Shown: positions 611 through 22,901 of the stretch, piece after piece
Layout: every line of letters starts with the position of its first letter
How positions within the stretch are numbered: position 1 is the first letter of the stretch
Assembly: GCA_907165135.1 (NCBI GenBank)
Contig: OU015568.1
Coordinates: 2,542,001 to 2,606,000, forward strand
Origin: Oikopleura dioica
Taxonomy: Eukaryota > Animalia > Chordata
Length of the DNA: 64,000 nt
Reading direction: 5' to 3'
Translations under genes and position numbers: made by a program
The notes under the pieces: generated by a model
Told to the model about the DNA's origin: nothing
Databases searched by the model: none
What the model saw: only the letters and a program-made list of their open reading frames with translations

Positions 611-3600
611 TTAGAATGCGTACGATTTAACATGAGATGCCTCTAATTCTGGACTGCTTGCATCTTCGGGCAGTTTTCTCATTTTTGGTGAACGTATTGA
701 GGAAACACGCAAACTTCCTTCTCGGATCATTTGACCGGGCTTGTTGTCAGATGCAGCTGGTAAAAGGGTTTCAAACTTGTCGAGAAAAGAAGCCATTCCC
801 TATCAAAATGAAGCTTTCTCTCGCAGAACAAATTTTTCTGCCGAAAATCTGTCATAAATCAAGTCAAAAATGAGAAAAAATTGAAACCCGTGGCGAAAGC
901 GAAGGAACTTTGAGTCTTGTGCATCGATCTTCTGGAATGTCTTCTCGTCGATCCTCTTGAAAAATTCGATTCTTCAACCTCCAGCTTCTGCTTTTTAATC
1001 GTCGCCTTTTCTTTTATCTGAGCGTCCAAAGCCTTTAGAACTCGTTACACACTCTTTCTTTGGGTTGCATTACCTTATCTTGCACAGATTTGTAGTACGA
1101 AAGCTGGACGAATCTCCAAGCCAAGACGAAGATCAAATAGATCGCCAGAACGAGGAAAATCACGAGCCATGGAGAAATGACTCCCCAGACATGAGGAGAG
1201 ACGCCAATGAGTTTGAATGTGTCGATTGAGAGAGCGTAAGCACCTGAAGTTGACGATCTTTATTTCGAAAATTATTCTTCCATACCTTTGGAGTAGTACA
1301 TTCCAGAGAAAACAAAGTATGCGACCGCAGAGCCCAAAATCGCTGAAAAATCAAAACAAAGTCAAAAAATCAATTCCTTACCAGCAACATTCAAGATTGT
1401 CCAATTCTTCGTATCAAAGCACATTTGAAGCGTCATCACGAGAACAATTCCCGTTTGCATCGTGACTTGAAAAACGTTGATGTCCATTGGGTCACCGGCT
1501 GGTTCTTCCATTTCTTCGAGGCAGAAATACGAGACAAAGAAGAAAAAGACAGAGATGGCAAGTCCCCGGCCAAGGATGAACCAGAATCGTGACATGTTGA
1601 AAAGAGAATCATTTTGGCCTTGAAAGAAGAAAGTTAACAGAAAACCATATTTATGAAAAATTTTTTTTATACTCAGTCTTTTTTAAAAAACGAAAATCTG
1701 AGTCTTTATGTTTAACTTGAACCAGGTTTATCGAAATCATTCCATTTATTTCTCTTATGAATCTTTATTCTCGCAAAAGTCAAAAATAAACCTATTTCTT
1801 ACCAAGAGTATAAAGCTTCGGATTCTTGAGCGAGCTTCGTTCATTAACATCTTTGTCCATAATCGCCAAGATCAGCACCGGAATGGACGTATACACGACA
1901 TTATACGAAGCAATCATCATATCTTCATACACACTTTGAGCAGACCACAAGCAAAAGATTCCAAACCAAAATTGACAGAAAGTGAAAGCAAAGTTTTTGA
2001 CCAAAAAGTAGTCAAGAAAGATGGCCATTCGATAGTACGAGTAGCGGCCGTGGATGAGAAGGAGTCGCTCCAAATAGCGAAATTGACCAAAGGAGAAATC
2101 GGATGCGAGGACAGCTTGGGTTCCTTCAAGACCGGTTATTCCTGTCATCGGGTTAAAAAACGATTAATGGGAGATTTCAAAACAACCTCTAAAAATAATT
2201 TTGCTATTTTCAACAAACATTTTTCCATGATTTCAACCCACAATCCTATTCCCAAATGCGCTTCTTTAATCATCGACACATCATTCGCTCCATCTCCAAT
2301 CGCCAAAGTGATGCATTTTTCTGCCTCTTTCACCATCGCTACAACTTGAGCCTTTTGAAGCGGAGTGACTCGGCAGCAAATGACACTTTTGCATTTTCTG
2401 GAAACATCGAGGAATAAATCATGATGGTCCGAAATCGCGAATCCGAGGGCTTGGCCGGTTATGACCAGGCCATAATCGCCGTGTCCAGAGTCCAGTTCTT
2501 TCTTCATTTGATCGAGGGTTGTTTTCACTTCTTCTGTGGTCTCCTCCGAGACTTCGAAGACGTTTGTCATTTCATTCGCAAGCAAATTGCATGAATAACC
2601 AATGTTTATTGCAGTTTCCAATTTATCCCCCGTCAGGACCCAAAGTTTAATTCCCGCCAGAAGAATTTGCTTGATAGTCTCAGGAACGCCATCTTGTAGC
2701 TTATCCTCAATGGCAGTAACACCAGCAAGGATCAGATCAGACTCGAGCTCTTCATGAACAACAGAGATTTTTTCATCACGATTTTCCATAGATGTTGCAG
2801 CTTCGTGATACTTTTCGTGCCAGTTTTGCCACTCGTTTTCGCTCAAATTTTTGTACCCGAGGCAAAGAGTTCTCAACCCATCTTCAGCAAATCGAGTCAG
2901 GGCTTCATCAGTCCCTTTTCGGACATTTTCATTCGTCGATTTCGTCAGATTTGAGAGAACAGTACTGTCAGCTCCTTTTGTGTAAACAATAATTTGACCG
3001 CCACCATTTCCTTCTCGGATAACAACGGACATTCGCTTCCTTACATTGTCGAAATCCGCGATATGGAGCACCTCGTACGTCATTGTTTCATCCAGCCGAG
3101 AAACCTGAATTGTATCAGTAGTTCTGTTCGTGAAGACAAAGCCAAAAGCGCGTGCTGCTGAAACTAAGGCTCCCTCATCTGGTGATTGTGCTTGATAAAC
3201 CATGCTTTTTGGACTACCCACTCCGTCAAGATCCACTTCTGTATACTCCGGCATAACAGTATGATTCAAGGCCAGTATTTTCAAAAAGCGGTCGACGTGC
3301 TCGTTTCCTTTTTTAAAATCATCGATCAAGCTCTGATCCGTGAAAGTAAACTCGCCATTATGATGCCTGTTCCATGAAAAATCAACTGGCCGTGAACCAT
3401 TACCGTAGATTCGCCCGCCGATATAAGCTTTTTTAAACTCCATGATATTCTGCGTCAGTGTTCCGGTTTTGTCTGAAAAGATGTAGCTCACTTGACCAAG
3501 CTCTTCGTTAAGTGTTGTTGATCGAGCACTTGCGGGAGTGTCGTTCTTCTCGTAGTACATTCCTCGGTCCCAGTTGATGAACATACTTTGTCCGAGCCGG

Positions 3601-4760
3601 ATCATTTCTACAGAGACATACAGGGAGATCGGGACCAAAGTGTTGAGCAAAATTGTATAGGACCAAAAAATAAGCGCTCCAGATTTCCAAGGCGTCCAAG
3701 CTAGGCTACTCCAGTCTTCTACCTCCATCCAATCATCGTTGATTTCATTATCCCAGGGGTTGAATTGTCGGAAATAAATCCCAATGTTGAATTCGCTCAC
3801 GATATGGCCGATAGTAGCGCCAAAGGCGAACAAAACAAGAATGGCAAAAATAATAATAACGAGGCGATTCATGAGGAGATCCATGTTAGTCCGCTTGAAC
3901 CGGGCATTTCCGCCATTCTTCATCAATTTCGAGTCTGGTCCCGCGTAAACTACGACGCCAATTGCTGAAGGAGTATTTCGCAGAATCGTTCCGCGAAGGA
4001 GGACGTTGTCGTTTGAAACTTGGACCTTGCCACTTTTTGAATTAAAAGTTCCGTCGAATTTGGGGAGGCGGTCATTTGGCAGCTCAACATCCATACTTGT
4101 TCCGTCCGTGTTTTTGACTAGTTTCGCAAAATCTTGATTCTCCCAGTCGTCGAAATCGATCGTCTCGGTCGTTTCCTTCAGCGCCGTTTTTATTTTCAGA
4201 TTGGTTTCTCCATCCAATTCAGCTGTTTCTAGAAACGCCACTGCATCCTCATTTTCCGAGGCCAGCAGAACCACATCTGCAGGCACTCCTTCATCCTTTT
4301 TGAGCAAGAGAAGATTGCCAGTCATGACGTCTTTCCAAGGAATGATTTCTAGCTGGCCATTTTTGAGAATTTTCAGGACTTTCTTATTGTTTAAAAATCT
4401 ATCTTGGCGATGGCGCTGCAAATCATCGTATCCGTCTTTAATCATGGTCACTTTGAAGGGCTTAACCTTTCTCACCACTCGGTTTTGAAAGACATGATTT
4501 AGTGCTAGCATTATCTCGTAATTACTAATTAGTCAAATTGTTGTTAGAAGATTAAGCCAAGACCTAGAAGTACGAGAATGAGGGGGATGGCAGTGCCGGC
4601 TGGATTGACGGAAGAAATGATTGGAATGCATTGAAGAACAACCATGACGAGAAAATAAATATTGGCGAAGCGGTGGAATTGGATGAAGAGGTTGAGGGGG
4701 ATGAAGGTGAGGATGTTGTATTTTGAGGTCTTTTTTTTGTGATCAAAAGTAGTTTCTTTT
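611..4760 (-). CDS. P4-type ATPase / phospholipid flippase, ATP8B-like (multi-exon; N-terminal exons may extend to ~5600)
   Basis: Exon 4564-4760 encodes TSKYNILTFIPLNLFIQFHRFANIYF. The long exon has LDGETNLK, PISLYVS, SDKTGTLTQN, SPDEGAL, LTGDKLETA, CCRVTPLQKA and IGDGANDVSMI, followed by SDFSFGQFRYLERLLLIHG. A C-terminal RRHSRRS..SFAFA motif is present and the stop is at 611. Confidence 0.95.
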
Positions 4761-6348
4761 TAGATTCGGCAAATCAAAATGATCCGAAAATCTTCAGAGC
4801 CAATCAGATTCTGATGATTTAGAGGATAAATTGAAATCTGATTGGCTCGCTACTGATTCAATTAAATCTTATTAAATTAAATAAATTAAAAAAATCCCTT
4901 TTTCCTCAAAAATCCTGGAAAAGACAATTATTAATCACTAGGGTAGGCCAAAAAAGGGTGAAGTCTTCAAATCTCATTCAAACTTTCAGAGGTCATTGAA
5001 GGGGCGCTATTAAAAGAGAATTTCAAAAAAAATCTCGAAAAAAATTTTTGGGAATTTTTTTTCCGCCCAAAAAAATTGAAAAATCAGTTTTTTCGTAAAA
5101 TTTTTTTCTGAGATATATTTTTCACTCCTTTTTATTGCAGATTCTTGTAGATCTTGACAAGGCGGTCATTTTGATACCCGAATCATGTTAAAGGGATAAG
5201 CGGAAAGATCCGAAATCTGTAATTGAAAACTGTATATTTCATATGTTACGTAATCCGAAATTTCTAGAATTACTGAAAGTACAGTAAATCTCTGTTCAAA
5301 ATTGTGGAGAATCAAATTCTGAGTAATTTGATGCTAATTTTAAGTCAATCGCCTCGTCGAGATCTATCAGAAACTGCAATAAAATTCGCTGAAATGAGAC
5401 TTCACTTTTTTCTTGGCCGACCCTATTAATCACCTCCCTTAATTTCATTGATTTCATGATCTTTGTTCGCGTAATTACTCCACAGCTTCTTTTTGCTCCC
5501 TTGCCAAAATTTCGGAATCTGCGAAGGTCCACTCCATCTCTCTGAATCAATCACAACCCTTCTCGTTTTTGAGCTCACTTTCGTCTGCATATCTTCTTTG
5601 CTAAAAAGGAAACTACAGTTTTTTGTTTTCGTTTTTATGGAAAGTCGTTCATCGAATGATGAATTTTGTTCCCATAGCAGCGTAAACGTAAAAATTTGCT
5701 TTTGCTTTTTTGTAGGAAAATGACTGAGAAGTTTATTCTGATGAATAGAGAAAAATTGATTTTATGAGCGTCAGAACGAAAAATTTAATACTTTCAAATC
5801 CTTTTCATATTTTTACGTCGAGAATCGTACATAATTTACGCAAAAATAGAGTTACGTTTTTGAACTATGAATTAAATTTTTAAGATTTTTAAAAGGAAAA
5901 ACAGAGTTTCGCTAGAAACGATTTTTACGAGTATTTAATTTATGAATTATCTTTCGATCATTTTTTATTGTCTCTGATCATTTAAAAATGAATCGTACCG
6001 TTTTTCTTCTGACATCGTAATTTTCTTAGTGTTTTTTCTTCATCATTCTATTCTGATTTTCTCCAACAGGGTGAATCTCTCAATCGGTAAATGAAACCAC
6101 CTCGATTTTCTGGCTTTTTCACTGCTTGACGAAATTCTCCAAATATTTGCTTCCGTCAAATACTCCCTTTCCGCGTCTCGTTATCAAAGCGCAAATATAC
6201 GAATAGCTTTTCGTAAGACCGATTCGTCAGAAAACTATCGAAAACGAAAAAATGTCTCTCAAAGCGTTTTTTCTTTGTAATTCTTGCGTTTGTAAAATAT
6301 CACGCTCATTTGGCTCGGTGTAGTGCGCCCCGGACGTCGATTTATTAT

Positions 6349-8561
6349 TCAGGCATTTTTACGACGACGCAGGACAAAAGGGGAGATCTGGGACGCAAAA
6401 TTGCTTTCATAAAAATATTTGGGGAGACAAAACTCTGATTCAATAAAGCAATTAAGGATACAGAGCGGCCGCCACTGCTTCACTGATTTTGTGAAAACAA
6501 AACCGTCAGAATTAGATTTTGGACTTGGCTTGGTGAAGATGAATGATTTGCAAGCTATAAAACTCGAGAATTTAGGGATAGTTCTTACAAATTGAGAACT
6601 ATTGATGAATAAAAGGCATTTTGGTAAATTCATGTTACTTGTTGTTGTTGTCGTCGTTGTAGTTGTGGTCGTTGTCGTTGTTGTAGTCGTTGTGGTAGTC
6701 GTTGTGGTCGTTGTTGTTGTAAAGAGACAGGTATCCTGATCTTTGTCGAAAATCTGTCCAAACGAGCAAAATCGACAAGTCCCTTCATTATTGCAAAAAC
6801 AGCTTCGAACTCCTTGTCCGAAAATTCCATCACACTCATTTTGACAATCTGAGTCATAGCAATTCGGAGTTGTTGTCGTTGTTGTCGTTGAAGTTGTAGT
6901 TGTTACAAAAACTAAATGTTCAAAAGCTTCGATATGTACAGAGTTACTTACTTCCCATATCGCCTGTTGTTGTCGTTGTCGTTGTTGTGGATGTAGTTGT
7001 TGTTGGAACAGGCGTAGTTGTTGTTGTTGCTAGAGCAAAAGGTAAGAACGATCGACAATGAGAAAAAACCTTCGCCAGAGCAAACATCCTGAGCATGATT
7101 CCAGCTCTCCCCTCCGGGACAAAGAGCACAATCCCCTTTTGAGTCACAGTAACAACTCGCGATATTCACCCCGAACGTCATGTCACACTCTTGTTGGCAC
7201 TGAATGTCCAGGCAGAACTTCGCCGTCGTTGTTGTCGTTGTCGTCGTTGTTGTAGTTGTCGTTGTGCTTGAGCAAGAATCGAGATCCTTGATGAAGAAAT
7301 CGCCAAAAGCGCAGAATCTACAGTCTCCTTCGTAGTTGCAGAAGCAGCTTCGGACTTCTGGGCCGAATATTCCGTCGCATTCAGCTTGGCAATCGGAGTC
7401 GTAGCAGTTTGGGGTGGTTGTTGTTGTCTTTTTAGTGGCTCAGAGAATTGGTTTTGCTGCATTTTTGGGAAGAGAGTGTTTATTGTTCGGAGCCCTACTC
7501 GTAGTTGTCGTTGTGAAAGGAACAAACGTTGTTGTCGTGGAAATCGTCGTCGTCGTTGTTGAAGTCGTCGTTGGATAGAACTGATAACCAAGCGAGGTAG
7601 TGAGCGTTTCCTGAGATAATCCAGTAATTAACCTGTTTTAATAAGCGGCATCAGCGATAAGTGATCAACTTACCCGGTCGGCAGAAACCCACAAAAGGAA
7701 GTCCGTTGCGGTGTAAGAATCTGCACCTTCTACGACCACTTATCAAATGATTATGAAACCTGATTCCACAGATTAAATTCTCAAAAATCTCAATTACTCC
7801 AGAATTGATAGAGAAAGAAATGTTTAATCAAATTCCTGAGCCATCTTCGTTCTCAGTCACCGTCGTTCCAGAAACAATCGAAATCAGCTCTCCTTGAACA
7901 TCGGTGATGAAAATGTTCAATCCGCCCTCGCCATCGTCAAAAATATAGCAAATACTCCCATCCGGCGCTTTGTACTCGCCGACGATTGTAGAAAGAAGCG
8001 GATCTTGCAAGAGTTACACTGTCGAAAAAAATCCCGGGAAATGATGATTATGTAATAAAAGGCTTTTGCTCAAGGTGACGAGGCTTCAAAAAACCAGCCG
8101 CTTACCGAATGTTTCCGGAACGAGGCTACTCATTATGGTCTTTTGGAGATCAGTTCATTTTTGCGAAGCAAGTTATTTTTATCAAATTCGAAATCGGGTA
8201 TTGATTGAAGAAAATTTTTCGCTTAAGAAAAATTAAAAACCATAAGTTTTCTTAAAATTTTCCGGTTTTGCAAAAATTATCATCTGGCAAAAGTGACAGA
8301 CACAGAAAAGTTATCGGACTGTATTTGCCCGAAGGTTTAATCTTATTTTTAGAATATTATAAATGATAAATCATGCAAACTCTTTCCTGAGCTTTTATAA
8401 GATTCCAGCGCTCCCAAACTAAATCCGAATTTTCTCAAAATCTTCAAATTCTTCGAGCTTCCGGAAAGTCTCTCAACAGCACCAACGTTCTCATTCTTCT
8501 GAAAGAGCTGCTCATCCCCTCTGCCAAGAGCAGCAAGAAGCAACAAAAAGAAGAATTTCAG
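6349..8561 (-). CDS. Secreted mucin-like protein with Thr-rich tracts and three 8-Cys modules (orphan)
   Basis: Signal peptide MSLKFFFLLLLAALGRG. Exons join in frame through GT-AG, GA-AG (7739-7835) and GC-AG (7030-7075) introns. Poly-Thr (ACA/ACG) tracts alternate with CYDSDCQxECDGIFG..VRSCFCN.EG.CRFC-type modules. The 3' exons are less certain. Confidence 0.8.
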
Positions 8562-9563
8562 ACTCATGGTCAAGAAACAGCCGAATTCTGATTTTGTCTA
8601 TTTGATGATTTGATTAAATTCGTTGACTTTTGGATCCGTGAAAATTAGGTTGTTCTCGCCGAAATGGAGTTTCTATCGCTTTTTCAATTATATAACAAAG
8701 AAAATAAGGGCTACATAAAACAAGGCTCGGCCCTTAAAATAACTTTGAAGAAAAGCCGCATTTAGCGGCTGTTTCAAAATTGAAGCCGCAAGGAATTTTT
8801 TTTCTTAATCTTTTGCGGCTTTGATTTTGAAAAAGCCGCTGCGCGGCTTTTCTTTAAAGCTGTCTGAAGGCCCTGAATCAGCTTGCCGAGCCTAGGTATC
8901 AAGAAAATAAATAAATTTATTGAAGAAAAAACGAAACGGAAGCCTTGATTTCCGACAATCGAAAAAGCGCCCGTTCCAAAACGTGCACAGGAAGATTGAA
9001 TTTGTTTGGAAAGCGCGAGCGCCGGGGAAATTCGAATTAACAAGATGAGGATTAATTCCGTTTTGATGACTCACTGATTTTTATGGATAAAAATCAAACA
9101 CAGTTACCCCTCGTTTTGAAGTTGGAAAGCCTGTGAAGTAGGGTATCTTCCGATAAGTAACGCGAATCAAAGCAAATGTCCGAAAATGTTACCAATTAGT
9201 TTGAAAACTTCAGATCCGCGCGTTTTCACGCTAAATTGAAGAAACATGTGTTGGATTAAAAATTTATACCAGGTGCTTCACGTTTTCAGAAGCTCAGTTT
9301 TTAAAGGTTGAACTTTTGAGGATTTTTGAGCGAAAAAATTTCGCTTCTCGTCAAAATTTTTTTATTGCTTATTTTTCGGTGAAAATGCCTAAAAGTTCAG
9401 ACTTTTTTCTGTTATATTTTTGAAATAAGGATTAAGACTTATCATTGACGACTAGAAATTATTTCTGTCGCTCAATCTTTATCGGGGCGTGATAAAGAAA
9501 TTGACGGCTTTTTTATTTCCAAGCTTAGTTTGTTTTTGCCTCAAAAGATACGATGGGGATCAA

Positions 9564-12090
9564 ATGAAAGAGCTGAAAATTTTAACTGGATTTCTTTTTT
9601 TCATAACTATCGTATTCTTCTTTTTAACTGAGACTCTCAGTCTGAGAGAACAGATAGACACTATATTCAAACAAACGTTTTAATCATTAGATCGGGCGAA
9701 AAAGAGAAACAAATTATAAAATCGCTGCCAGCAGAAAATGTTCTCCTAGCGACAGGATACAGAACCGGCTCTTCTTTTTTCGCAGAGCTTTTTAATCAAA
9801 ATGATGACGTTTTTTACGTAAGTTTTTTTCGTACAACATTTACTGGAATCTAAATTCATTTTCAGCTTTTTGAGCCAGATCACAACGTGGTATCAAAAAA
9901 GGGATGGATGAGTTAGGGTCCGACACGATCGGAGGACTCGATTTTTCAAAGGGCAAAATAAACAACACCCCCAAAGAAAATCATAGGATAACCTAGGTTA
10001 TCGAATACGGCGAAAAATATGCCGGCACTTAAAGCCCGGCAAATCTTCTAAATCGCCGATTTCTCTCGGTTTTTTGGGTTTCTAGGTCGTTCACAATTCC
10101 AGGCCCGTTCCTTGATTTTTAACTTTAAGGGGGAGTATCACGCTTTTACGAAAGTCGGATGTCTAATAATATCTTTCCAGATTTTTATAGCTTAGGCCTT
10201 AATTAACAAAAAAGGTATTCAATATTTTTCTTATTTTTCAGAAAAAATACCCGAAAAACGACATTGAAAGTTGCCTACTCGCGCCTATTGACATTTGTCT
10301 GCGACACTGTGGGTGAAAAAATTGTGTTCAGAGTACTTTATTTTTACATTTTTATGCATTTTAAATGAATATTCTCACATAAAAACATCAGAAAATCTTC
10401 ATTGAAGCATTTTTCAATACCGATTGAATTCATGAAAAACTTTATTTTTGGAAGTATTTTTTCAAAAAAATTTTTGTTAAGAATTTTTTGAGTACACAAA
10501 ATTTCCTTCAAAACAGCCTTAGATAAGGGGATGAACTTTCTAAAACCACTGAGAATTCCAGGATCCGACTTGATTTTCTTAGAAAAATTTTAATCCTACG
10601 ACAGCCCAAAATCGCGATTTTTGAAAAACGGGGTTGACTCTCAGCTCTCTACTGCCAAAACCGGTTGAGTAAATTAAAATCTGAGAAAAACAGCACTAGA
10701 TATTGGTCAGATCTATCGACCTTAGGCAGAATTTTACCGATATCTGAGGTGTGCTGGAAATCAGAGCAAGTCTCCGACCCCCCTTTAGCCCAAAATCCGT
10801 GATACTCCCCCTTAAGGGGCTTGACAAAGGCGTTTAACTCTGAGGTGATCAATCTCAGTTTTGTCCCCAACCCCACCCACACCCATTTACATAAAAATTA
10901 AAATTGTCCCTATTTCTAGGTTTGTTATGGTTATTATCCTACAATTAATTTTTTTTAATAACGAGATTTATTCAATAACAATAACATTTATTAAAAAACT
11001 TGATTTTTGGTGACTCGACCTCACCACCTCTTGCTTGTCAAGCGAGAGCGCTAACATTTGAGCCACCAAGGGAATCATTCGGGCAGTATTTAAAATCGCT
11101 CGGCGGAGCTGACCAATCAGAGCGCACTTGGCTCTCCGTTTAAATTTTCATTAAAGCCCTGAAAAGGGCTGAATGGGGGGCTTTTGGGAGAATCAGTGAA
11201 CGGAATTGAATTCCTTAGGGTCGAATTAGTGGAATCGTGAAGTTTCATTGAAATTAAATTTTTGGTCCTAATCATGCCGGACCCTAGGATGAGTCCTGAT
11301 GTTCAAGAAGACTGGGCTTCTTTTATTCTCGATCTTTTCCAGTGCAATTTTTCAAATCCTGACTTGTTGAATATCAATCCAAACAGGACCAATATCGTCT
11401 TTGAGAAGAAGGACCGAGTTCTCAAACGACCAATCTGCGACTCGAACAAAAACTGTCGGCATATTGAAATAAATGAAGCCGAATATCTTTGCAAGAAAAA
11501 GAAGAGGGTAATCAAAACAATTAAGCCAGCAAATATAGAAATTTTATTGAAAGAAGCAGAACGGAGAAATGTTGATTTAAGGGTCCTCCTCTATTTTCGG
11601 CAAGTCTTTCAGCATTCAACCTCTAGAATTTTCTTTTAGAGACCCTCGATCAGTGTTCCTTAGCCGTGAAAAAGTTGGCAAGGTTTCAGACTACTTTTTG
11701 AACATCAATCAATATTGCACCGAAAAACTGAAGCAGCAGAAATTCTACGAAGAAAATTTTCGTCTTCATTCTCCAAAATTGATGTCTCTGAAATTCGAAG
11801 ATCTGGCAATAGAACCAGAAAAAAACGCGAGAAATATTTATAAGTTCTTAAAATGGCGATTTCCTGAGAACTTGCATAAGTGGATCAAAAAGAACACGTC
11901 GACAAAATCAGATTTTATGATTGTCTGAAAACAATTCTAGCGCTTTTTTCTAGAGCATTCTGGAACCTTTGGAACTTCGAGAAACTCGGCAGATGTTGTG
12001 TTCAAATGGAAAAGCGAAATTGGAAAAGAACAAAAATTTTTGATTGATACAATTTGTAAAGATTACCTGAGTGCTTTAAATTATTCCTGA
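9564..12090 (+). CDS. Golgi carbohydrate sulfotransferase (CHST / Gal-GlcNAc-6-O-sulfotransferase family), type II membrane protein
   Basis: N-terminal hydrophobic anchor. 5'-PSB-like LLATGYRTGSSFFAELFNQNDDVFY|LFEP, 3'-PB-like LLYFR|DPRSVFLSR, then LKFEDLAIEP and FGTSRNSADVVFKWK. Stop at 12088-12090. Confidence 0.9.
9914..11286. mobile_element. Non-autonomous hAT-like DNA transposon inserted in a CHST coding exon
   Basis: Left end TAGGGTCCGACACGATC and right end (reverse complement) TAGGGTCCGGCATGATT match at 14/17. Flanked by a perfect 8-bp direct repeat GGATGAGT at 9906-9913 and 11287-11294. No transposase ORF. Confidence 0.88.
10129..10811. mobile_element. TTAA-flanked MITE (GG..CC termini, Kolobok-like) nested in the hAT-like element
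   Basis: Perfect 14-bp TIR GGGGGAGTATCACG / CGTGATACTCCCCC. TTAA at 10125-10128 and 10812-10815. Confidence 0.85.
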
Positions 12091-12878
12091 CTTTATAAAA
12101 ATCGGAATCATCAAGCGTTTAGAAATCCATTTGTCGGCGGATTTATGCCAAATAAATCTGCCAAAGCTTCAAATATTTCAATATCAAGCGCCGCTGGGTG
12201 GATTATTCTTCCCAGACTTGAGTTCTATTGATTTGATAAAGATGGATTTGAACACGTACTCTACCCTTAACTCTTTTCGCTTCAGGTCTGTTTTTATTTG
12301 CTTGCCTTTGAACTGCAGGGTCATGTTTTTGTCATGTTTTTCTTTGACCGCTCACGTTTAAGGTCAATTTCTCTGAGCAAGGAATTTTTACATGACCAAA
12401 TAACGGGTTTAATCGTCAACGATTCCCCAGTCTACGAGTTTAATAGCAACTTTTTCCTCGAAAGCTGTTGTTTTCTTCACTTCCGCGGCTATTCATTTGA
12501 AAAAGAGCGATGTTTTTCTTTCGACGAATTTAGCTGTTTGAAATGGTGCCTCGGTCTGATCTTCTTGAATGCCGTACTAGCACCTGAGTTCATGATTATG
12601 AGCGATTATGATGCTGCCCAGAATTTTTTCGCGAAAGCTGAACTGGAAACAGAATAACCAGCATCGTTTTCACGGAATTGATGAATTGAACTTTTCGAAA
12701 AAAATAAATAGTATATTTAGAAAAATCTTCATTTTCGATAAGATCATTCAAACAATCTTTTTGAATTTTATTTTGCACATTATTCATGAGTCACATCTCT
12801 TTAAATTTACAGGTCTACAAATTTTATTCAAAGACTAACATAACACGCTACTCTAAATTTGCGAACGAGACCCTCTAA

Positions 12879-14145
12879 ATGAGTTTTTGGCAAGAGAAAA
12901 TAGACGAACTCGGTACTAATACTGATCCAATGGCGCTTCTTGAGATGGTCAATTCAAATTTGGCTTTAATTGAAGATCGGTCAGAAGAAATTGACTGTAA
13001 AATGACTGAATATCAAATTTCTTGGCTGTGTTTCCAATCAGATAGAGGTAAAAGTTTAACCGTTAAACATTGAAAAATCAATTTTCGGCGAATTCGTCTC
13101 TTGATCTCAATATATTTTAGTTCTGAAGGAAAAGTGCAAAGATTTCCCTAGCAAATCTCCGAGGATCGATAAAAATCTCGCTCTACAACTTGAAAAATAC
13201 GAGGATTTTCATTTTGTCTACTGTAATCAGGAAGAGTTCCAGTTGAAGAGGTCATCAATCGAGCGAGTTATTTCGGAACAAGTCAATGCAGCTAAAAACA
13301 TCAATGGCAATCATCCTTATATTTCTAATTCAATGATTAATTCTGCACAAGAATTTGCTGAGTCTAAAGATCAAAGAGATGACTTCGATAAATACGTCAC
13401 CAATATCGCCTTCCTTGAAAAAAACCATCCGACTGAGATGCTTAATCTTCTTAGATACCGATACGTCCGACTTTGGCTTGAATTTAAAAATTCTCTTATC
13501 TCTTCAAGAAAAAATGAGAACTATTATCAACAGCAACTTCAAAAACTAACGAAAGAGAAAGAACTTCAGCAAAAAAATCAAGAAAAATTGCGAGAACTTC
13601 AGCAAGAAAATGAAGAAAAATGGCAAGAATTTCAGCAAAAAAATCAAGAAAAATTTCAAGCAACAGTTGAGGAAAACAAAAAGAAATTGATAAATCTCAA
13701 AAATGAAATCAACTTTCTCAATATTGCGGTTGAAAAAAGAAACAATACTATAAAAGTACAAAAAGCGGAAATTGAAAATTTTAGGAGGGCTGCAGAAAAG
13801 TATCAATCCGACAAAAATGAACTCAAACGGACACGTAAAAGTTTGGATGAAGAAAGATTGAAATCAAAAACAGTACAGAAGAAAACTGATTACCTCGAAA
13901 AAGAACAGAATGAGCGAATTAAATCTCTTGAAGGGGAAGTTGAATATCTAAGACGCGAGAAACCTGATGAATGCTCAATTTGTTGCTCAAATTATGATAC
14001 AAAGGATCATCGCAAATGCTGTCTGGCAAAATGTGGTCATCAGTTTTGCATCAAATGTTTGAAAGATGTTCTCGGAAAAAATAATGCAGACTGTCCAACT
14101 TGTCGCTCAGATTTCTCTGAAAAGCACATTATCAAACTCTTTTAA
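12879..14145 (+). CDS. Coiled-coil protein with C-terminal RING-HC finger (putative E3 ligase), 2 exons
   Basis: The 12879 exon splices in frame (acceptor 13120) into ORF 13243-14145. It has a Q/E/K-rich coiled coil and CSICC...KCGHQFCIKC...CPTCR. Confidence 0.85.
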
Positions 14146-15965
14146 TGTTGTGTTCTCAAATAAAATAGTCAGAAAACTCTTTTTGATATTCACGATAATA
14201 TAAAGAAACAGAGATGCCTTAGATAACTTTAGGTAGTGCCGGGCGGCGGGATCAGTCAATTCAGCCAAATTCGGAAATCGTATTTTCGATAAAAATGGAA
14301 TTATGGGCGCACACCCTGTGGTTGGCAAGAGGAATAAAGATGCGCAAAGCTGCACTTAAACGCGCAACTTTTTTTTGAAAAGAACGTAGCAATTTATTTT
14401 TATCCGACGTAGAGTTTTTTGAACACTAGATATTGATGACAGCATTTTTCATAATTTCAGGAATAATTTTTACGACCTTAAAATTGTAGCTAAAAATACA
14501 GCTTAATTTTTGTCTACATAACATCACATTTGTCGTCATTTTTCAAAGTGCCCTGGCGCCAATTCTCACAAATTTTAGTTTGACCAAAGAAATTTTCCAA
14601 AAATGCTATTTCTAGTTTTTTTTGCTATTTTTAAACATTTTCAAGAGCGTGACGCAATTTTTGAAGGCTTAAAACTTTTTAAAAGTTCATTTCAAAACTT
14701 GTTTCATTTTTTCGTGAAACATTTTTTCTAAGCGCGAAGTTACTTTGATCAAAATTTCGAAACATGCGTTTAGAAGTTTTAAAAAAATGATGTTCGTAAT
14801 CGACAGAAAAAATCTTGAAATCTTGAATTTTGATTAATTGCGCGAATTACCGAACGGTTGCTTCAAATCAGGATACGTACAAGTCATTGAGAAAACACAG
14901 TACTCGTACTTGTAAAAATTTTGCAATGGTCAGTTAAATGAAGCCGAGTTTCATTTCCGAAACAATATTTTTAGAATTTAATGCTCTTGTGGGGAGATTT
15001 CTTGCGTTGAGAAAATATGTTGTGTTTTTTACTTCAAAAAATTTAATGACGCCTGCATTTAGCAACCTGTGTAGAAAACCTGCGTAAAGATTTTTTATTC
15101 ATTAGTTGCTGAAAACTGACTAGAAAGCCGAGTCGCGGCTTTTTTACAATCAAAGCCGCAGGGCGGCTTTGCAAAAATCACTTTTTCAAATTTGTTCTTT
15201 GGTGACCCTGACTCAGGTTTTCTAGACAGGTTGCCGAGCAGACTGACGGCGACCTAAAACGCGGACTTACTGATGTCTACTTATCTTAATTTTATTCGTG
15301 TTTTACTTACTACTGGGAAATCCAGAAGTTCAACTCTGACGCCATTTTTGAGAATCTTTGCGAGTCGAATCTCCGAATTCGGGATCTGGTATTGCATGTT
15401 GGAAAGGGTTAAGGGCTTAGATATTGATGCTTCCTTCTCCAAATTGATATCATCTTGTTTTGGGATTGAACTGCTGGTTCTGTGGTTTTCTATTAAAATG
15501 GAATTGATCAAATAGAAAAATATATAAATTTTTAATATAAAATTTAAACATTTTATTAATATTGTTGAATTGCTCACAGCTTTCCGCAATCAGTAGAGGT
15601 GACTTCTGACAAAGATATGAGACAATTTAAACTGAAAAGAAAGATTGCAAAAAGCCTTTTTTGATGCAAGATTGAATCTGATACTATCATTGGCATCACT
15701 GATTAGTCCCTTATAAACACCGAAATTTCTTATCAGAAGACAGAAATTCGCTTGAGTAGCGCTTATCAAATTTTCATGAAAACTCGCGCGCTCAGAGTTC
15801 TAGCGCCCTCCCGCCGCGCGCTCCATCATCGAGCCCCGCGCGCGTATAAAAACGTATTCAATGCTCTCCTCAATCATCAAACTATCGATAAGATAGAAAC
15901 ACTCAAACAAGCTCCTCAAGGAACTTCCAAGTGAAAAAACCTCTTTGTCCTCTTTTATTTCAAAA

Positions 15966-17080
15966 ATGAAACTTTCGACTTTCTTCGCTACCGTCGCCGT
16001 CGCTTTTGCTGATGTTGTCGACGATGACGTTTGCATCTCGAATGGACAGGAAGTTCCCTGTGATGCTCCCCAAGTTGCTCCTATTGTAAGTTTCAGAGAC
16101 CATAATTTAGTGCAGAAATAGTTTTTCCGGATTTTTCGTATGACTAACAAATTGACACTCAACTGACACTGACAAAAACATGGTCAATAGAAGAACTAAT
16201 ACTAGTTAATTATATGAAATAAAATTGGAATATAAATTTTGAAGTAAAAACAAAAGGTCTCATTCACTCAAAATTCTCTAGGTCCGATCCGGCCGACAAG
16301 AAGTCGATCGAAGTATTGACCAAGAGCGTCGCTACTCCGACCTCAAAGCCATGGCTGAAAAGCTCTGGGCTAAGAACGGGCTCAAGGGAGACGATGCTTT
16401 TGACGAGCGAAAATACTGGGCTTACGGCTGCCACTGCTATCTCCTCGGTAAGAAAGAACTTCCTCGTTATTTTTCTTCAATTTTACTTCCTAGGAGACAG
16501 ACCAATGACCGAGATGGGTATGGGCCGACCTAAGGACGCCCTTGACGCCAAGTGCAAGGCGTACAAGGAGTGCCAGCGATGCGTCCGAAAGAACCACGGA
16601 GACGAGTGCATCGGCGAGTTTGTCCAGTACACCTGGAAATGGTCCGGAAGACAGGTGAGCTACTCGACAAATTGATCGTAGATTTTCAATACTCATTTTA
16701 GAACGAGTTGGTTGGACGAGATGACGCTGGATCTTGCCCTCGAGAGCTCTTTGAGTGCGACAAGAAATTCGTCGAAGATATTCTTGCGGAAAAGGACGTC
16801 TTCGACAACCAATACCACGCTTTCTGGTCCGGCGGAGATGGCGAGAGCTTCTTCGATAATCGAGACCCAGCCAACTGCTATTCCGCTGGAGGAGTTCCAG
16901 GTAAAGAATCCCCGCTTCTACCATCTCTTACATCGTTTAGTCGAGCACCAATGCTGCGGAGGCCACGACCAGCCCTTCTTCTGGATGAACAAGAACAAAA
17001 ACACTTGCTGCGCTACTCGAGATGGCAATTCCGGAAACGTCAAACCATCTGGCTTCTCTTGCCCCCACGGAACCTTTTGA
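15966..17080 (+). CDS. Secreted Cys-rich protein with a secretory phospholipase A2-like fold, catalytic residues absent
   Basis: Signal peptide MKLSTFFATVAVAFA and five exons joined in frame. It contains YGCHCYLLG..GMGRPKDALDAKCKAYKECQRC, CPRELFECDKKF and a C-terminal CCGG...CC tail. Confidence 0.8.
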
Positions 17081-18740
17081 AGCTTCTTCAAGTTAAATAA
17101 TAACGACCTGTAAATTTTTATACGATACTTTTTCCTTCGCCATTTTTTGTGCCCGATTATATAATAAACAATACTGCAGTAAATCTGTCTTTTCGCTTAC
17201 TAAAAATTTTGAGTCAAAAACAATTTGATCGTTTGAATTAATTGATTCAAATTCTTGCAGAGGTGTTTCGATTTGCTTGGTTAATTTCAGTGCATTCAAT
17301 CTTCAACGCTCTTATTGAGCATTTTTTTTCATTCAAGAGCGCTTCAGGCTAAGGAATGAAAGAACCTCGTGATTCATGAGCTGATGAATCTGTTGCTGGC
17401 TCTCTGAGCAGCTCCGAACGCTGATTTACGAGAGAGTCTCAGACCTTGCCCGCCGCCAGAGAAGGAAAAACAACCAAAGTTGTAAAAAACAAATCATTTT
17501 ACCGGAGAGAAAAAGTGAATTTCAATCGTAGTAGTCCAGATACTCATGTAAGTAAATATATAATAACAAACTCATTGAAGAAAAATAGTAAAAAGTATTC
17601 AAGCTTTCCTTCAAAAATGCATCTTATGGTTTTTATAAAGAAATTGTATCCAATAAAGTATGTCGGTTTCCAGGCATTTCTTAAAAAAAAATAGATTCGA
17701 AATAAAAAAAAAAATTGACATAAAAAGTCTCTTAGAGAAGGAAAAAACAAGAATCGCTGTCATGCAATCAGCTTATTTTAATTGCATTAGCATTGTCAAT
17801 CATCTCCTAATCACTACCAACGTGTTTTACTAGTCTGACTGCTTCCTCCCCGTCACAAAAACAAGAGTCACCGCATTCAGTGATGAACTTATGAATATAT
17901 TAAAAGCAGCTTTCTTCATTTTAGCCGTCTCATTTTCACCCTCAATAATTCACAAGGTCCGTCTTTAGAGCATTTTCTCTCAATCTTTTTAATCCAGTTT
18001 CTTTTGTTTTGCGCGTGTCAAGAGTCTTGACTCAAGACGAGAAAATAACAAATTGAGGTGGCGGTCGAGAATTTTTTGTAAAGATTGATGAGGTCAAAAA
18101 TTTTTCAAATAAAAATATAAAGTTGGATAAAAGCCAAGGCACAAGGGTGTAAAACTAATTGTAAATAAGCAGGAAGCGGTTGTAATGTTGCCATTACCGC
18201 GATTGTCATAACCCTTGTAAAAGAGAGAGAACGGCGACGATGAATTTGAAAATTTTCCAAATGATATTTGTTTTCGCCTAGGGGAACTTTGCGCGTTTGC
18301 CCAGGTTAAGGGCCCAGTACATAATTGACCTTGAATCAAGGGGATCCTCACGGGCTTTTCCATCCTTTTTTCCCAAAAAAGACCGGAGAGAACTCAAAGA
18401 AAACGGTAAAAATCGCTGTTGATGCCCTTAAAACTGCTGATTTTGTGTCATATTTTCCCGAAAAAGTAAGCCGTAAATACGCGTAAATCAAAAATCAGTT
18501 GTTTGATTTTGACAAGTCGTAATGAATGTTTGCAGAGATCAAACGAGGCCACAACTGGCTAATATTTTTCCAATTGACAAACTTCTTTGTAGATTTCGAC
18601 AGGAAGATTAACTTGAACCAGAGGGAGCCGAGGAGAATCGCCCCGGCGCGCGTGCCCTAAGAAAAGAAGTCATTATTATCGAAACAGCGTTGAATACATT
18701 TTTTGGAAGAAAAAAACGAAGAGAAGGGAAACAGCTTAAG

Positions 18741-21700
18741 ATGAGCGATCAAGTTAAAATATCAGGTACAAAACTTATTCGGAAAAAGGACAATTTTCGA
18801 TATTTTTTGCAGAAAGAGGATGAAAAAAATAGCAATCATCATTTAAAATCTGGTCAACTAATGAGTTATTTGTTTGTTTAGAAATCAAACCCTAACCCTA
18901 ACCCTAACCCTAACCCTGACCATGACTCTAAGCAAAACCCTAAAAAATCTTCTAGGAACACTGATGGAACGACAAAAAGCGCTTGAAAAATCGCAACAAA
19001 GCTGGAAAAACAGCCAACAAAAGGTAAAGGCCCTTCTTAGAAACGCCCTTCAGCTGTCCATTTAATAGAATGATCTGAGAAAAAGAACATTCGATGCATT
19101 ATTCAAAAGATTTCCGCAAAGCACTTCAAAACTTTTTTGCCCCGCGTTAGAGATTATGAGCTGGGTCAACATTTGCTCAGATTTGACGAGCGCCGGAAAT
19201 CGCACAATCAAAATGACATGTTCAGAAGACAGTAATACTCCACTGTTATTCGGAACATGGGGAATATTAAACTTCTGGGAAAAGTTCAGCTTTGCAAATA
19301 TCGAAAATGCCGGCAAATTTATCAAAAGACAAAATTATCGAAAAATTCACTAGAATTTTAAGGCAAATATCGTTCCACAAAACAAATTGTCTGACAGACT
19401 CGCTGGTCTTCAGAAAAATGCAACTTGGCAGAAAAAATCTTCATCTGATCCCCTTCCCGTGTCATCTGGAAAACTCTCAGATCGACTCGCCCAATGCCAG
19501 GAGAATGCGAAATACAAAGAAAAGAAGATGGAGGTACAGAGTGCGGGCAATTTGAATAAAAAGCTTGACTTGCTAAATGCGGCGGAAAGCAATTGGAAGA
19601 AAAAGGTCGAACATAAAGATCATCAAAGCTTGTCGACTTCCGCAAAGGTGAGATCTTTGATTTGACAATCAAAAAATAAAAACAATAACTCTTTCGTATA
19701 AATTATAAATTGGTCGAAAATTTCATCAGTAACAAGAGTGAATTCAAATTTTTAAGTGAAAGAAATTAGTCGGCTACATCCTCAATTTATAAAATTCATT
19801 ATTCAGGCACAAAAATCCGGAAACAAATTCTCCAAAACCCCGTCTCGAACAACCTCTCTACCAGTCAAATCCGTCATCAAGCCGCAAACCATCAAGTTAT
19901 CCAAAAACTCCGAGGCGCGTTCAAAATCATTGTCAGAGGACATTTCCGACCTTGAAAAGCTGGCAACACGAAAGGGAGAAGATTCCGTCTCGCTGAAAGT
20001 AACAAGAAATCAGAAAATTCCGAAGTTCGACGAAAGCATTCTTGATGAAATTCTCTCGCCTTCGTTCAAAGAAAATGTTCAACCGGCGAAGGATGCGGAG
20101 GACTTTTCTTTCATTCCTCAATCACCTCCTCCGAAAATCACCCGGCTTTCAAAGCCAAGAAGAAAGCGCCCCGCTCGGGAGCAAAACCGCAATCCTCTGA
20201 GATCCGCGCCGATTGGAGAGGATAACTACACGGAAGAAAAGACTAATTTGTCGGAGAAAATGTCCGGGAAGGTCTTTACGAATTCCGCCCTTGCTGGTTT
20301 AGCGGCGAAAGAAGACATCAACGCCGTCAAATTGAAATCCAAAAATGATCGGTTACTCGCTGATGATTCGCCATACAAACACCCGATGCTGATAAAACTC
20401 AAGGGGAGAAAGCGAGCTTTTCCGTTTGTCGTTCCTTGCTCGATCTCATCCCTCACCAATGATGACTCATTCATCCTCATCACTCAAAGTACCGTCTTCG
20501 TTTTCCTTTCCGAGTTCTCCAACATCGTAGAAAAAGCAAAAGCGAAAGATTTTGCCCGGTTTGTTTGCCAGACATCAGATTTGGGCACGAAAAATCCAGT
20601 TTACAAGCTTGTCAGTGCAAAAACCAACGAGTTCTGGAAAATCCTCGGTGGAAAAATGGAAGACATAGAAGAGGTCAAATACGACCCAGATATGGCAGAT
20701 GATGATTTTGAGGCAGAGTGCTTTTCGAATTCAAGAGTTTGGGAAGTGATAAAAGCTGAAAATGAAGATTCAGCGATGCTTAAACCGGTTGAAAACCAAT
20801 GGGGAAGAAGTCCGAGCCAAAAGGACCTGGAGAGCGAAAAGATCTTCGTCTTCGAATTTGGTGCCGAAATTTACACCTGGATCGGGGCAAAAGCTCAGTA
20901 TCGACTTAGAACAAAGGCGAAAGAGCTTGTCAATTATCTGATCGCTAATTATTACGGTGAATCTGATCTAGAATCGATGATCATTGGCCGAGTTACCGAA
21001 CATAGGGAGACCTCGTTGTTCTCCGAAAAATTCGTCGACTGGATTCGACCGAACCAAGAAAATGTCCTTTTACCTATCGCAGAACGAAACAAACTCAACA
21101 TTCAAATCATCGACTACAAACCCGTGACCCCAGATCTCGACACAGAAACTCCCGACTATCCCCTGACCGAAGGGAAATTCAACGTCTCCGGCGGAGATGG
21201 CGAAATCGTCGGCGATGATGGACGAATCATGAAAATTTCAACGATCAGTTATGAAAAACTCACCCCGATGAATGGAAAATTAAAGACGATCAGCAAGAGT
21301 ACTTTGACTTCTGAAGATGTTGTTCTCGTAATATGGAAGTTTTCAATCGCTGGGACGGGCAAATGGTTTGGAAAACAAATGAAGAGCGTGAGAAATCAGC
21401 AAGATCTGCCAAAGGGAAGCCAAAAGGAAGTACTGTTCCTCTGGGGCGGAACTGAAGCATCGGAACTCCTGCTTGGAGAAGCTGCTCTTCTTGCGCAGGA
21501 TTTGGGACTCGGAGTGACTCACAATCTCAAGCCGGGGATGGAACCGAAGGCGTTTTTGAAAGCTTGGAGTGGAAGACTAACGATTGAGAAATCAGCAAAC
21601 TCTGGCGACAAATTATACACGAACTGTGATTCCTTGACTATGGAGGTCACTTGCGACAAGGAATCAGTGAGACACGGAATGAACTTCTTCTACCGAAAAG

Positions 21701-22177
21701 AAGGAGGGAGAAGAGTTCAAATGGGAAGTGGTGGGCCAAGCTGGTTCTCGGAAACGCCGAAAGAGCCTGTTGAAAAAGTTGAAAAATTATGGTCAGCGGA
21801 GAATTTCAAAGATCGAATTGGTAAGAAATGAGTCCTGATTTACCTCCTCCTTATAATTTTTTTAAGTTGCGATTGAGCTGCCCTCAAGAAAAATCTGGAA
21901 GAACTACCCATACGAGCTTTCTCAACTTACATCCCTCAGCCTCTTAATGACCAATATCAGAATCTACATCATCTCCGACACGCCAAAAACAGAGGGCTCC
22001 CATGCACAGGACTTTCAAAAGCGAGTCGAGTGTGTTCGTGAAATTGCGAAGAACATCTCAAATGGTAAATTATTCTTTATTAAATTTTCCATGAAAAAGT
22101 TTTTAGGAAAAACAATCAAAAAAATTGAAAAATCGACTTTACCTCATCGTTTCAAATGCCTTTTTCCTCCTGTATAA
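18741..22177 (+). CDS. Supervillin-like / gelsolin-villin family actin-binding protein
   Basis: Repeated N-terminal (D/E)R(L/Q)xxLxxxxxxWKx motifs. Gelsolin-like segment LIKLKGRKR...SSLTNDDSFIL...FSNIVEKAKA, then KIFVFEFGAEIYTWIG and SALFSEKF-like TSLFSEKFVDW. Start and last exons were inferred manually. Confidence 0.8.
18888..18917. repeat. Interstitial telomere-type repeat (AACCCT)5, i.e. TTAGGG on the minus strand
   Basis: Five perfect AACCCT units followed by degenerate units. Lies in the inferred first intron of the supervillin-like gene. Confidence 0.85.
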
Positions 22178-22410
22178 GACCTATTATTAAACTATTGCTT
22201 GAAATATAAAGACCACGAAAAAATAAACAAAAATCAAAAATTATCTTTCAAAAACCGGACTTGCTTCGAGCAACTTCGCGGGGATTTTCCACTTTCGATC
22301 TCTCGCTTCTCATTTTTCTCAAGGGTTCAACCGGTTCAAGCTCAACCGCTCAGCATAAAAAAGAGTCTGCGGCGCGGTAGAATATCAGTTTTAAGAGAAG
22401 TTCTGAGACA

Positions 22411-22829: not shown

Positions 22830-22901
22830 CACGCCATTCAACACATAGTAGAATTTTCAGCTTTCAATTTTATTCAATTCGAAATTTGCTTATAAACGAT
22901 T

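What the first reader, a model, noticed from the sequence alone, without database searches (positions are those of the whole stretch)
9906..11294. hAT-like transposon that appears to have become a precise GA-AG intron (introner-like) in a sulfotransferase exon
Seen: the 1373-bp element (9914-11286) has TAGGG-type TIRs and a perfect 8-bp TSD GGATGAGT, and it interrupts the codons for K-G-W-M-S-P. Removing the element plus one TSD restores the frame exactly (LFEPDHNVVSKKGW|MSPDVQEDW). Among all sliding registers of the direct repeat, only 9907-11287 ends in AG. Its donor GATGAGT comes from the left TSD, and its acceptor is the element's terminal TA plus the first G of the right TSD. The GT..AG combinations available there shift the frame. 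Known: 8-bp TSDs and TAGGG/CAGGG ends are hAT hallmarks, and GA-AG introns are tolerated in Oikopleura. Inference: any insertion of this TA-terminated family at a GGA-starting target would create a harmless intron, which is a mechanism for making new non-canonical introns in a host with a relaxed 5' splice site.
Basis: partly seen in the sequence, partly recalled or inferred. Interest (0 to 1): 0.9.

Follow-up and report, generated by a model that had tools for sequence, protein, structure and literature searches.

The report
Polymorphic transposon inside a sulfotransferase exon
A 1.37-kb hAT-like transposon has recently jumped into a coding exon of a sulfotransferase gene in an Oikopleura-like genome, and uninterrupted copies of the site still exist, but whether the cell splices it out as a new GA-AG intron could not be tested and remains an open, easily testable idea.

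Summary
The structure is real. A 1373-bp element (9914-11286) has 16-nt TIRs (TAGGGTCCG..., 14/16) and a perfect 8-bp TSD, GGATGAGT. It interrupts exon 3 of a 322-codon carbohydrate-sulfotransferase-like gene, and deleting 1381 nt restores the frame exactly.

I found the empty site twice. It occurs in DNA contigs of run X27, from the same study as the best holder of the window. It also occurs in a Tara Oceans metagenome contig that is the 91%-identical orthologue and carries a single GGATGAGC. Paralogues read straight through this position. So this is a recent insertion that is still segregating, not an old intron.

The element is composite: a 683-bp MITE with TTAA duplications is nested inside it. 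A second TAGGGT..CCCTA element with an 8-bp TSD lies at 4939-5425 in non-coding DNA.

The intron claim is untested. No RNA read or transcript-derived protein of this gene could be obtained. An exact GN-AG register arises by chance for 9.5% of random targets. The donor context (tg|GATGAG) does not fit the published Oikopleura GA-donor context (AG|GAA). A GT five bases downstream would shift the frame when paired with the same acceptor.

I give about 0.4 to precise splicing and about 0.5 to a null or leaky allele. Other first-stage notes on this genome report similar exon-borne elements; none has been checked.

The parts
9564..12092 (+). Host gene: a 322-codon carbohydrate-sulfotransferase-like ORF. 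Exons are 9564-9643, 9691-9817, 9866-9906, 11288-11599, 11640-11911 and 11954-12092. The first and last intron boundaries are inferred only.
   Evidence: The model gives an open ORF. It carries the RTGSS (PAPS 5'-PSB-like) and RDPR..SR motifs. Exon 5 hits Pfam Sulfotransfer_1 and Sulfotransfer_3 at E about 1e-4, just under the cut-offs. Homologous exon ORFs were found in marine metagenomes. dN/dS against orthologue L001 is 0.20.
9906..9913 (+). Left copy of the 8-bp target site duplication, GGATGAGT
9914..11286 (+). 1373-bp non-autonomous hAT-like element (composite)
   Evidence: TIRs and TSD. It has no ORF longer than 77 aa. DNA depth at its ends is about 10 times the unique depth, so it belongs to a repeated family. 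It is absent from the empty-site allele and from the orthologue.
9914..9929 (+). Left terminal inverted repeat, TAGGGTCCGACACGAT
   Evidence: (I12)
10129..10811 (+). Nested 683-bp MITE flanked by TTAA (10125-10128 and 10812-10815), with TIR GGGGGAGTATCACG...
   Evidence: Inverted repeat I1. Exact 17-mers on both strands. Very high DNA depth at its termini, 1,250-19,200. Short DNA joints skip it (10120/10122->10812).
11271..11286 (-). Right terminal inverted repeat (reverse complement TAGGGTCCGGCATGAT)
11287..11294 (+). Right copy of the TSD, GGATGAGT
9907..11287 (+). Candidate exact-removal intron, GA..AG, 1381 nt (hypothetical, no RNA evidence)
   Evidence: Register analysis. In the predicted fold of the pre-mRNA, the TIRs pair (9913-9929 with 11271-11287). 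This leaves the donor single-stranded and puts the acceptor AG in the stem.
9912..9917 (+). Competing canonical donor GTTAGG at the TSD/TIR junction. With acceptor 11287 it leaves 5 extra nt and gives ...KGWMR*.
   Evidence: reading of the sequence

Best explanation
Shown: a composite non-autonomous hAT-like transposon inserted recently into exon 3 of a carbohydrate-sulfotransferase-like gene. The host is a compact, Oikopleura-like larvacean genome. The outer element is about 690 bp with TAGGG ends, and it carries a nested 683-bp TTAA MITE. The insertion duplicated the 8-bp target GGATGAGT. The insertion is still polymorphic: an uninterrupted allele co-exists in the same set of samples, and the orthologue of a related lineage is uninterrupted.

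Inferred: the fate of the transcript is unknown. On balance I read the insertion allele as a loss-of-function or at best leaky allele of one member of a multi-copy sulfotransferase family. Such an allele is tolerated because paralogues exist and the insertion is young. Precise GA-AG removal is a serious minority possibility, not the default.
For: - TSD, TIRs and frame restoration are in the sequence.
- Empty site as DNA: X27 has two contigs joining 9905->11287 (skip 1381, 7 ambiguous letters, side 41 nt). The same run also holds reference-identical pieces of the flanks and of the element interior at 12.5-14x.
- Tara contig L001 is the orthologue: 91% nt identity over 425 nt including both flanking introns. 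It carries a single GGATGAGC.
- Paralogues L002, P0006, P0012 and P0014 read through the site.
- There are many paralogues, so losing one copy is plausible.
- The donor tg|GATGAG differs from the published O. dioica GA-donor context AG|GAA (PMC7072748).
- The acceptor CGGACCCTAG lacks the T-rich tract seen at the gene's short introns.
- A GT donor 5 nt downstream gives a frameshift with the same acceptor.
- An exact GN-AG register occurs by chance at 9.5% of targets.
- No indexed RNA run holds the gene's exons, and no reads at 95% likeness or better appeared in two RNA runs.
Against: - The host tolerates non-GT donors. The same gene has a GC-AG intron conserved in L001. It also has two more short introns whose best models are non-GT.
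- GA-AG is frequent in O. dioica (PMC7072748).
- The sister larvacean Fritillaria splices MITE-derived non-canonical introns (Henriet 2019, as summarised in PMC11282704).
- Several unverified first-stage notes report the same TAGGG..CCCTA, 8-bp-TSD family and other MITEs inside coding exons of conserved genes in this genome. That would be odd if all of them were null alleles.
- The insertion haplotype is present in all three samples examined (X25, X26, X27).
- The absence of RNA reads may simply reflect low expression, or RNA runs from another lineage.
Confidence: 0.5

Rival explanations
1. Nascent transposon-born intron. The pre-mRNA of the insertion allele is spliced at G|GATGAGT...CCCTAG|G (9907-11287). 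The donor comes from the left TSD. The acceptor is formed from the element's last A and the first G of the right TSD. This would give the wild-type protein. TIR pairing would bring the two sites together.
For: - The exact register exists and restores the 322-codon ORF.
- The host uses GC-AG, and probably GA-AG, in this very gene.
- GA-AG is common in O. dioica.
- Fritillaria provides a precedent.
- Denoeud 2010 is listed under transposon-insertion intron gains for Oikopleura (PMC3443670 Table 1).
- The predicted fold pairs the TIRs, leaving the donor 7 nt from the stem.
- The insertion allele is seen in three of three DNA samples.
- Unverified first-stage notes describe the same family in other exons.
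Against: - There is no RNA evidence at all.
- The donor context is poor against the published consensus.
- The acceptor is GC-rich and lies in the predicted stem.
- At 1381 nt the intron is about 30 times the usual length in this gene.
- The register has a 9.5% chance expectation.
- Other in-frame and out-of-frame sites compete.
Confidence: 0.4
2. Imprecise but in-frame splicing. The element is removed using other sites. Examples are GA 9910 with AG 11287 (one extra Met), GG 9901 with AG 11287 (minus 2 codons), and GT 9912 with AG 11307 or 11310 (minus 5-6 codons). The result would be a slightly altered protein.
For: One search lists 22 in-frame, stop-free GN..AG combinations within about 40 nt of the insertion. 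The region between the PAPS-binding motif and the QEDWASF block varies in length among paralogues.
Against: No RNA evidence. Most of these donors have no better consensus than the exact one.
Confidence: 0.07
3. The 'empty site' contigs are not alleles. They would come from a close paralogue or from cDNA contamination, and the element would then be fixed and older than it looks.
For: The left arm of the X27 joint contig is 41 nt, which is about the length of exon 3. The contigs were laid at 90% likeness or better.
Against: - X27 also has a contig bridging exon 2, a variant intron and exon 3 (joint 9823->9859). That is genomic DNA, not cDNA.
- X27 has a second haplotype at 12010-12157, in the gene's last exon and the DNA just after it.
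- The joint contigs match the window at 11325, 11333 and 11336, where the expressed paralogue differs.
- The independent orthologue L001 shares the flanking intron sequences and is empty.
Confidence: 0.03

Closest known systems
hAT-superfamily non-autonomous elements (MITE-like), e.g. Ac/Ds-type ends
   Same: It has an 8-bp TSD and short imperfect TIRs of 16 nt. hAT TIRs are 10-25 bp with 8-bp TSDs according to PMC3942097. The terminal TAGGG fits the YARNG motif, which I cite from my own knowledge. It has no coding capacity, it is multi-copy, and an empty-site allele exists.
   Different: No transposase or autonomous partner was seen. The TSD GGATGAGT does not fit the weak nTnnnnAn target preference (own knowledge). 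The element carries a nested TTAA MITE.
MITE-derived non-canonical introns of Fritillaria borealis (Henriet et al. 2019, Curr Biol; summarised in PMC11282704 and PMC13326754)
   Same: The host is a larvacean without a U12 spliceosome. A TIR/TSD-bearing element sits in coding sequence, with candidate splice sites at the element/TSD boundary and a non-GT donor.
   Different: In Fritillaria the introns are mostly AG-AC or AG-AT, they are shown to be spliced, and they are numerous. Here the pair would be GA-AG, splicing is not shown, and only one exonic copy could be examined.
Introners (Micromonas, Aureococcus, dinoflagellates and others; Huff 2016, Gozashti 2022 PMC9860276)
   Same: The idea is the same: a DNA transposon plus its TSD supplies the splice sites, so that an insertion in an exon becomes an intron at once.
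   Different: Introners are defined by many near-identical copies that are verified introns in unrelated genes. That could not be tested here. Oikopleura is not named in the main text of Gozashti 2022.
GA-AG introns of Oikopleura dioica (Denoeud 2010; Frey and Pucker 2020, PMC7072748)
   Same: GA at the start, AG at the end, and a host with about 11-12% non-GT/AG introns (PMC8008620).
   Different: [quoted passage not shown] Typical introns are about 47-49 nt, whereas this one would be 1381 nt.

Membership tests
hAT-like non-autonomous DNA transposon | 8-bp target site duplication | tested here: met
   GGATGAGT on both sides, 8/8. The empty site holds a single copy.
hAT-like non-autonomous DNA transposon | Short TIRs (10-25 bp) starting with YARNG | tested here: met
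   16-nt TIRs, 14/16 matching, starting TAGGG. The length criterion is from PMC3942097. The YARNG motif is from my own knowledge.
hAT-like non-autonomous DNA transposon | Related autonomous copy encoding a hAT transposase | not testable with these tools
   No ORF longer than 77 aa in the element. There is no other copy in the window, and no eukaryotic genome collection could be searched. The metagenome scan for the TIR gave only chance hits.
hAT-like non-autonomous DNA transposon | Repeated family with evidence of mobility | tested here: met
   DNA depth at the element ends is about 10 times the unique depth. A second element with TAGGGTnnGnCA ends and an 8-bp TSD lies at 4939-5425. There is a presence/absence polymorphism.
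Transposon-derived spliceosomal intron (introner-like) | Removed from mature mRNA at defined junctions | tested here: inconclusive
   The single read-laying run gave no read of this gene in RNA runs X4 and X5, only paralogue reads. No RNA run holds the stretch. No transcript-derived protein was found.
Transposon-derived spliceosomal intron (introner-like) | Exact removal restores the reading frame, using splice-like dinucleotides from the element and TSD | tested here: met
   GA..AG register 9907-11287. However, the chance expectation is 9.5%.
Transposon-derived spliceosomal intron (introner-like) | Many related copies acting as introns in unrelated genes | not testable with these tools
   Only the 64-kb window is readable. 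The one other related element there is non-coding. First-stage notes s1-330333, s1-330329 and s1-322901 claim further exonic copies but are unchecked.
Oikopleura GA-AG intron class | Donor context AG|GAA (conserved upstream AG and downstream A) | tested here: not met
   The site reads atg|GATGAG. The consensus is from PMC7072748.
Oikopleura GA-AG intron class | Pyrimidine-rich acceptor ending YAG | tested here: inconclusive
   The acceptor CATGCCGGACCCTAG ends in YAG. It lacks the T-run seen at this gene's other acceptors, TTCATTTTCAG and TTTTCTTTTAG.

The most novel reading that the evidence does not exclude
An active hAT-like family with TAGGG...CCCTA ends and 8-bp TSDs works as an introner in a laboratory chordate. 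When a copy lands in an exon at a target that gives a GN..AG register with the element's terminal A, the relaxed Oikopleura spliceosome removes the element plus one TSD exactly. This locus would then be a new intron caught while still polymorphic, with the intron-less allele in the same population.
Probability: 0.35. Interest if true: 0.8.

Novelty: new member of a known kind. Interest (0 to 1): 0.5.

Why it matters
How new introns arise is an old open question, and cases caught while still polymorphic are rare. This locus offers one in a culturable chordate, with both alleles in the same sample set. The insertion haplotype has C at 11312, 25 nt past the junction, where the empty haplotype in X27 has A. 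One RT-PCR or allele-aware RNA-seq experiment would therefore say whether a fresh transposon insertion in an exon is neutralised at once by splicing. A positive result would extend the MITE-to-intron route known from Fritillaria to Oikopleura and to GN-AG introns. It would also give a mechanism for the excess of lineage-specific non-canonical introns. A negative result would make it an ordinary disruptive insertion allele.

Tried and rejected
1. RNA test. Two bulk RNA-seq runs (X4, X5; 1.5-1.8 Gb read each) gave no reads at 95% likeness or better. They gave only 5-11 partly fitting reads whose loose ends show a paralogue (KNVQGMDKTV-QEDWA...). Read laying is capped at one call, so no further runs could be laid.
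2. Searching for an annotated or transcript-derived full-length protein across the junction. The exon-4 query, the exhaustive HMMER search and the paralogue P0012 as a longer query returned only exon-sized or partial ORFs from marine metagenomes. None came from this allele.
3. Collecting more copies of the family. The window holds no other copy of any part of the element. A metagenome scan for the 16-nt TIR returned 118 loci, and none resembles the element beyond the pattern, so these are chance hits.
4. Looking for a tRNA, SINE or known RNA inside the element: none found.
5. A crude motif survey of short introns in the window to build a local donor profile was too noisy to use.
6. Old intron at this position: rejected by the empty sites.
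7. Chance TIR/TSD: rejected.

Full report
**What is in the sequence.**
The stretch reads ...AAAAAGGGATG-GGATGAGT-[TAGGGTCCGACACGAT ... ATCATGCCGGACCCTA]-GGATGAGT-CCTGATG....
- The 8-bp direct repeat GGATGAGT lies at 9906-9913 and 11287-11294.
- It directly flanks 16-nt inverted termini at 9914-9929 and 11271-11286, 14/16 complementary (pair I12).
- The terminal 12-mer pattern is expected 0.2 times per window by chance and is found three times.
- The element has no ORF above 77 aa, no tRNA and no Rfam match.
- It is composite. A 683-bp MITE (10129-10811) sits inside it, with perfect 17-nt ends GGGGGAGTATCAC... and TTAA on both sides (pair I1). The termini of this MITE reach DNA depths of 1,250-19,200, against about 7-14 for unique sequence.

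**The host gene.**
- Removing 1381 nt joins LFEPDHNVVSKKGW to MSPDVQEDW.
- With the neighbouring exons this gives an open 322-codon ORF. It has a signal-anchor-like N-terminus, an RTGSS PAPS-binding motif and an RDPR..SR motif.
- Exon 5 matches Pfam Sulfotransfer_1 and Sulfotransfer_3 at E about 1e-4, just below the cut-offs for this fragment.
- Related exon-sized ORFs occur in marine metagenomes, so this is a multi-copy family.
- The short introns are 40-48 nt, as in Oikopleura (median 49 bp in PMC8008620).
- Intron 9818-9865 is GT-AG.
- Intron 11600-11639 is GC-AG. Its GC donor is conserved in orthologue L001, and the paralogue L002 has a GT-AG intron at the same position.
- The first intron can be modelled as GA-AG (47 nt), or as GT-AG (65 nt) with a purine-rich acceptor.
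- The last intron has no GT-AG solution that keeps the conserved C-terminal frame. It would be AT-AG (42 nt) or GA-AG (30 nt).
- These two boundaries are inferred from frame and homology only.
- I did not obtain a named hit for the organism. "Oikopleura-like" rests on these features and on the literature.

**It is a recent, segregating insertion.** The one read-laying run placed contigs of two DNA runs from the same study as the best holder, X25.
- X27 has two contigs with a joint 9905->11287 that skips 1381 nt. Seven letters fit on either side, as expected for an 8-bp TSD, and the shorter arm is 41 nt. These contigs carry A at 11312.
- The same run also holds reference-identical pieces of the flanks and of the element's interior at 12.5-14x, so both alleles are present.
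- X27 has a second haplotype elsewhere in the gene (for example 12010-12157, at depths 54.8 and 25.4). It also has a contig bridging exon 2, a variant intron and exon 3. This argues for genomic alleles and against cDNA.
- X26 has a reference-identical contig across the right junction (11260-11426).
- Independently, protein P0001 (90% identical to exon 4) led to a Tara Oceans metagenome contig, L001. It aligns at 91% over 425 nt, including parts of both flanking introns, and reads ...AAAAAGGGATGGATGAGCCCTGAC... with a single copy of the target.
- dN/dS between the two is 0.20, so the gene has been under purifying selection.
- Paralogues L002, P0006, P0012 and P0014 also read straight through.
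The proposed empty-site test is positive.

**Is it an intron?** This is where the evidence stops.
- No indexed RNA run holds the stretch.
- Two 2026 RNA-seq runs gave 11 and 5 reads, all at 90-95% likeness and only partly fitting. Their loose ends show they come from a paralogue.
- No transcript-derived full-length protein of this gene is in the protein collections.
- So neither the junction 9906^11288 nor retention of the element could be observed.

*Arguments from sequence for splicing:*
- The exact register GA..AG exists.
- The gene already relies on at least one non-GT donor.
- GA-AG is unusually common in O. dioica (PMC7072748).
- In the predicted fold of 9890-11310 the TIRs pair (9913-9929 with 11271-11287). 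This places the donor 7 nt from the stem.

*Arguments from sequence against splicing:*
- For an element ending in ...CCCTA, 9.5% of 8-mers sampled from the window give an exact GN-AG register, and 48% give some NN-AG register. The register is thus a 1-in-10 coincidence.
- The donor tg|GATGAG lacks the conserved upstream AG and the downstream A reported for Oikopleura GA donors.
- The acceptor CGGACCCTAG lacks a T-run and lies inside the predicted stem.
- GT at 9912 (ga|GTTAGG), paired with the same acceptor, leaves 5 nt and a stop (...GWMR*).
- There are 22 alternative in-frame GN..AG pairs nearby.
- The intron would be about 30 times the usual length in this gene.

**Context in the genome and the literature.**
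- A second element with the same terminal pattern lies at 4939-5425 in DNA where no reading frame is restored by its removal. Its ends are TAGGGTAGGCCA and TAGGGTCGGCCA, and its TSD is TTAATCAC. The family therefore inserts in non-coding DNA too.
- Other first-stage notes on the same genome describe TAGGG..CCCTA, 8-bp-TSD elements and other MITEs inside coding exons of conserved genes (POLA1, PQLC1, ATAD2, AMACR, HGSNAT). One note describes introns that do not start with G. None has been followed up and I could not read those windows, so they are leads and not support. If they hold up, the splicing reading gains much weight.
- MITE-derived non-canonical introns are established in the larvacean Fritillaria borealis (Henriet 2019, as summarised in PMC11282704 and PMC13326754).
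- Transposon-insertion intron gains are already credited to Oikopleura from Denoeud 2010 (PMC3443670 Table 1). I could not read that paper.
- Introners in protists and algae work on the same principle (PMC9860276).

**Verdict.**
- Family assignment to hAT-like non-autonomous elements passes every testable criterion. The transposase criterion cannot be tested here.
- The headline claim, a transposon that has become a precise GA-AG intron, is neither shown nor refuted.
- I put about 0.4 on precise splicing, about 0.07 on imprecise in-frame splicing, and about 0.5 on a null or leaky allele.
- The locus is a good test case because both alleles and a linked marker at 11312 are at hand.

Noticed in passing
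window 4931-5433: Second hAT-like MITE: 487 bp (4939-5425), perfect 8-bp TSD TTAATCAC, 17-nt TIRs TAGGGTAGGCCAAAAAA and TAGGGTCGGCCAAGAAA. It shares only the terminal TAGGGTnnGnCA pattern with the exon-borne element. It lies to the right of the P4-ATPase-like ORF, and no reading frame is restored by removing it.
   Followed up: partly
window 10125-10815: Nested 683-bp MITE with TTAA duplications and GGGGGAGTATCACG ends. Its termini are extremely abundant in the DNA runs (depth up to about 19,000 against about 10 for unique sequence), while its interior is near single-copy.
   Followed up: partly
window 9644-9690, 11600-11639, 11912-11953: The host gene's short introns are mostly non-GT. GC-AG (40 nt) has its donor conserved in the orthologue. 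The first intron is GA-AG (47 nt) or alternatively GT-AG (65 nt). The last intron has no GT-AG solution that keeps the conserved C-terminal frame, so it would be AT-AG (42 nt) or GA-AG (30 nt). The paralogue L002 lacks the first and last of these introns.
   Followed up: partly
window 2145-4511 (- strand): A 788-aa ORF that looks like a P4-type ATPase (phospholipid flippase), judged from DKTGTLT and GDGANDV motifs read by eye. It is an unusually long exon for this compact genome.
   Followed up: no
window 21286-23169: Another pair of 8-bp direct repeats (ACGATCAG) flanking 12-nt inverted ends CAAGAGTACTTT and CAAGAGGACTTT. It could be a further element or chance.
   Followed up: no
window 11304-11350 (RNA runs X4, X5): The only RNA reads laid come from an expressed paralogue sharing QEDWASFILDLFQCNF. 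It has different flanks: ...KNVQGMDKTV before the shared block and TNPLLILNKK... after it.
   Followed up: no
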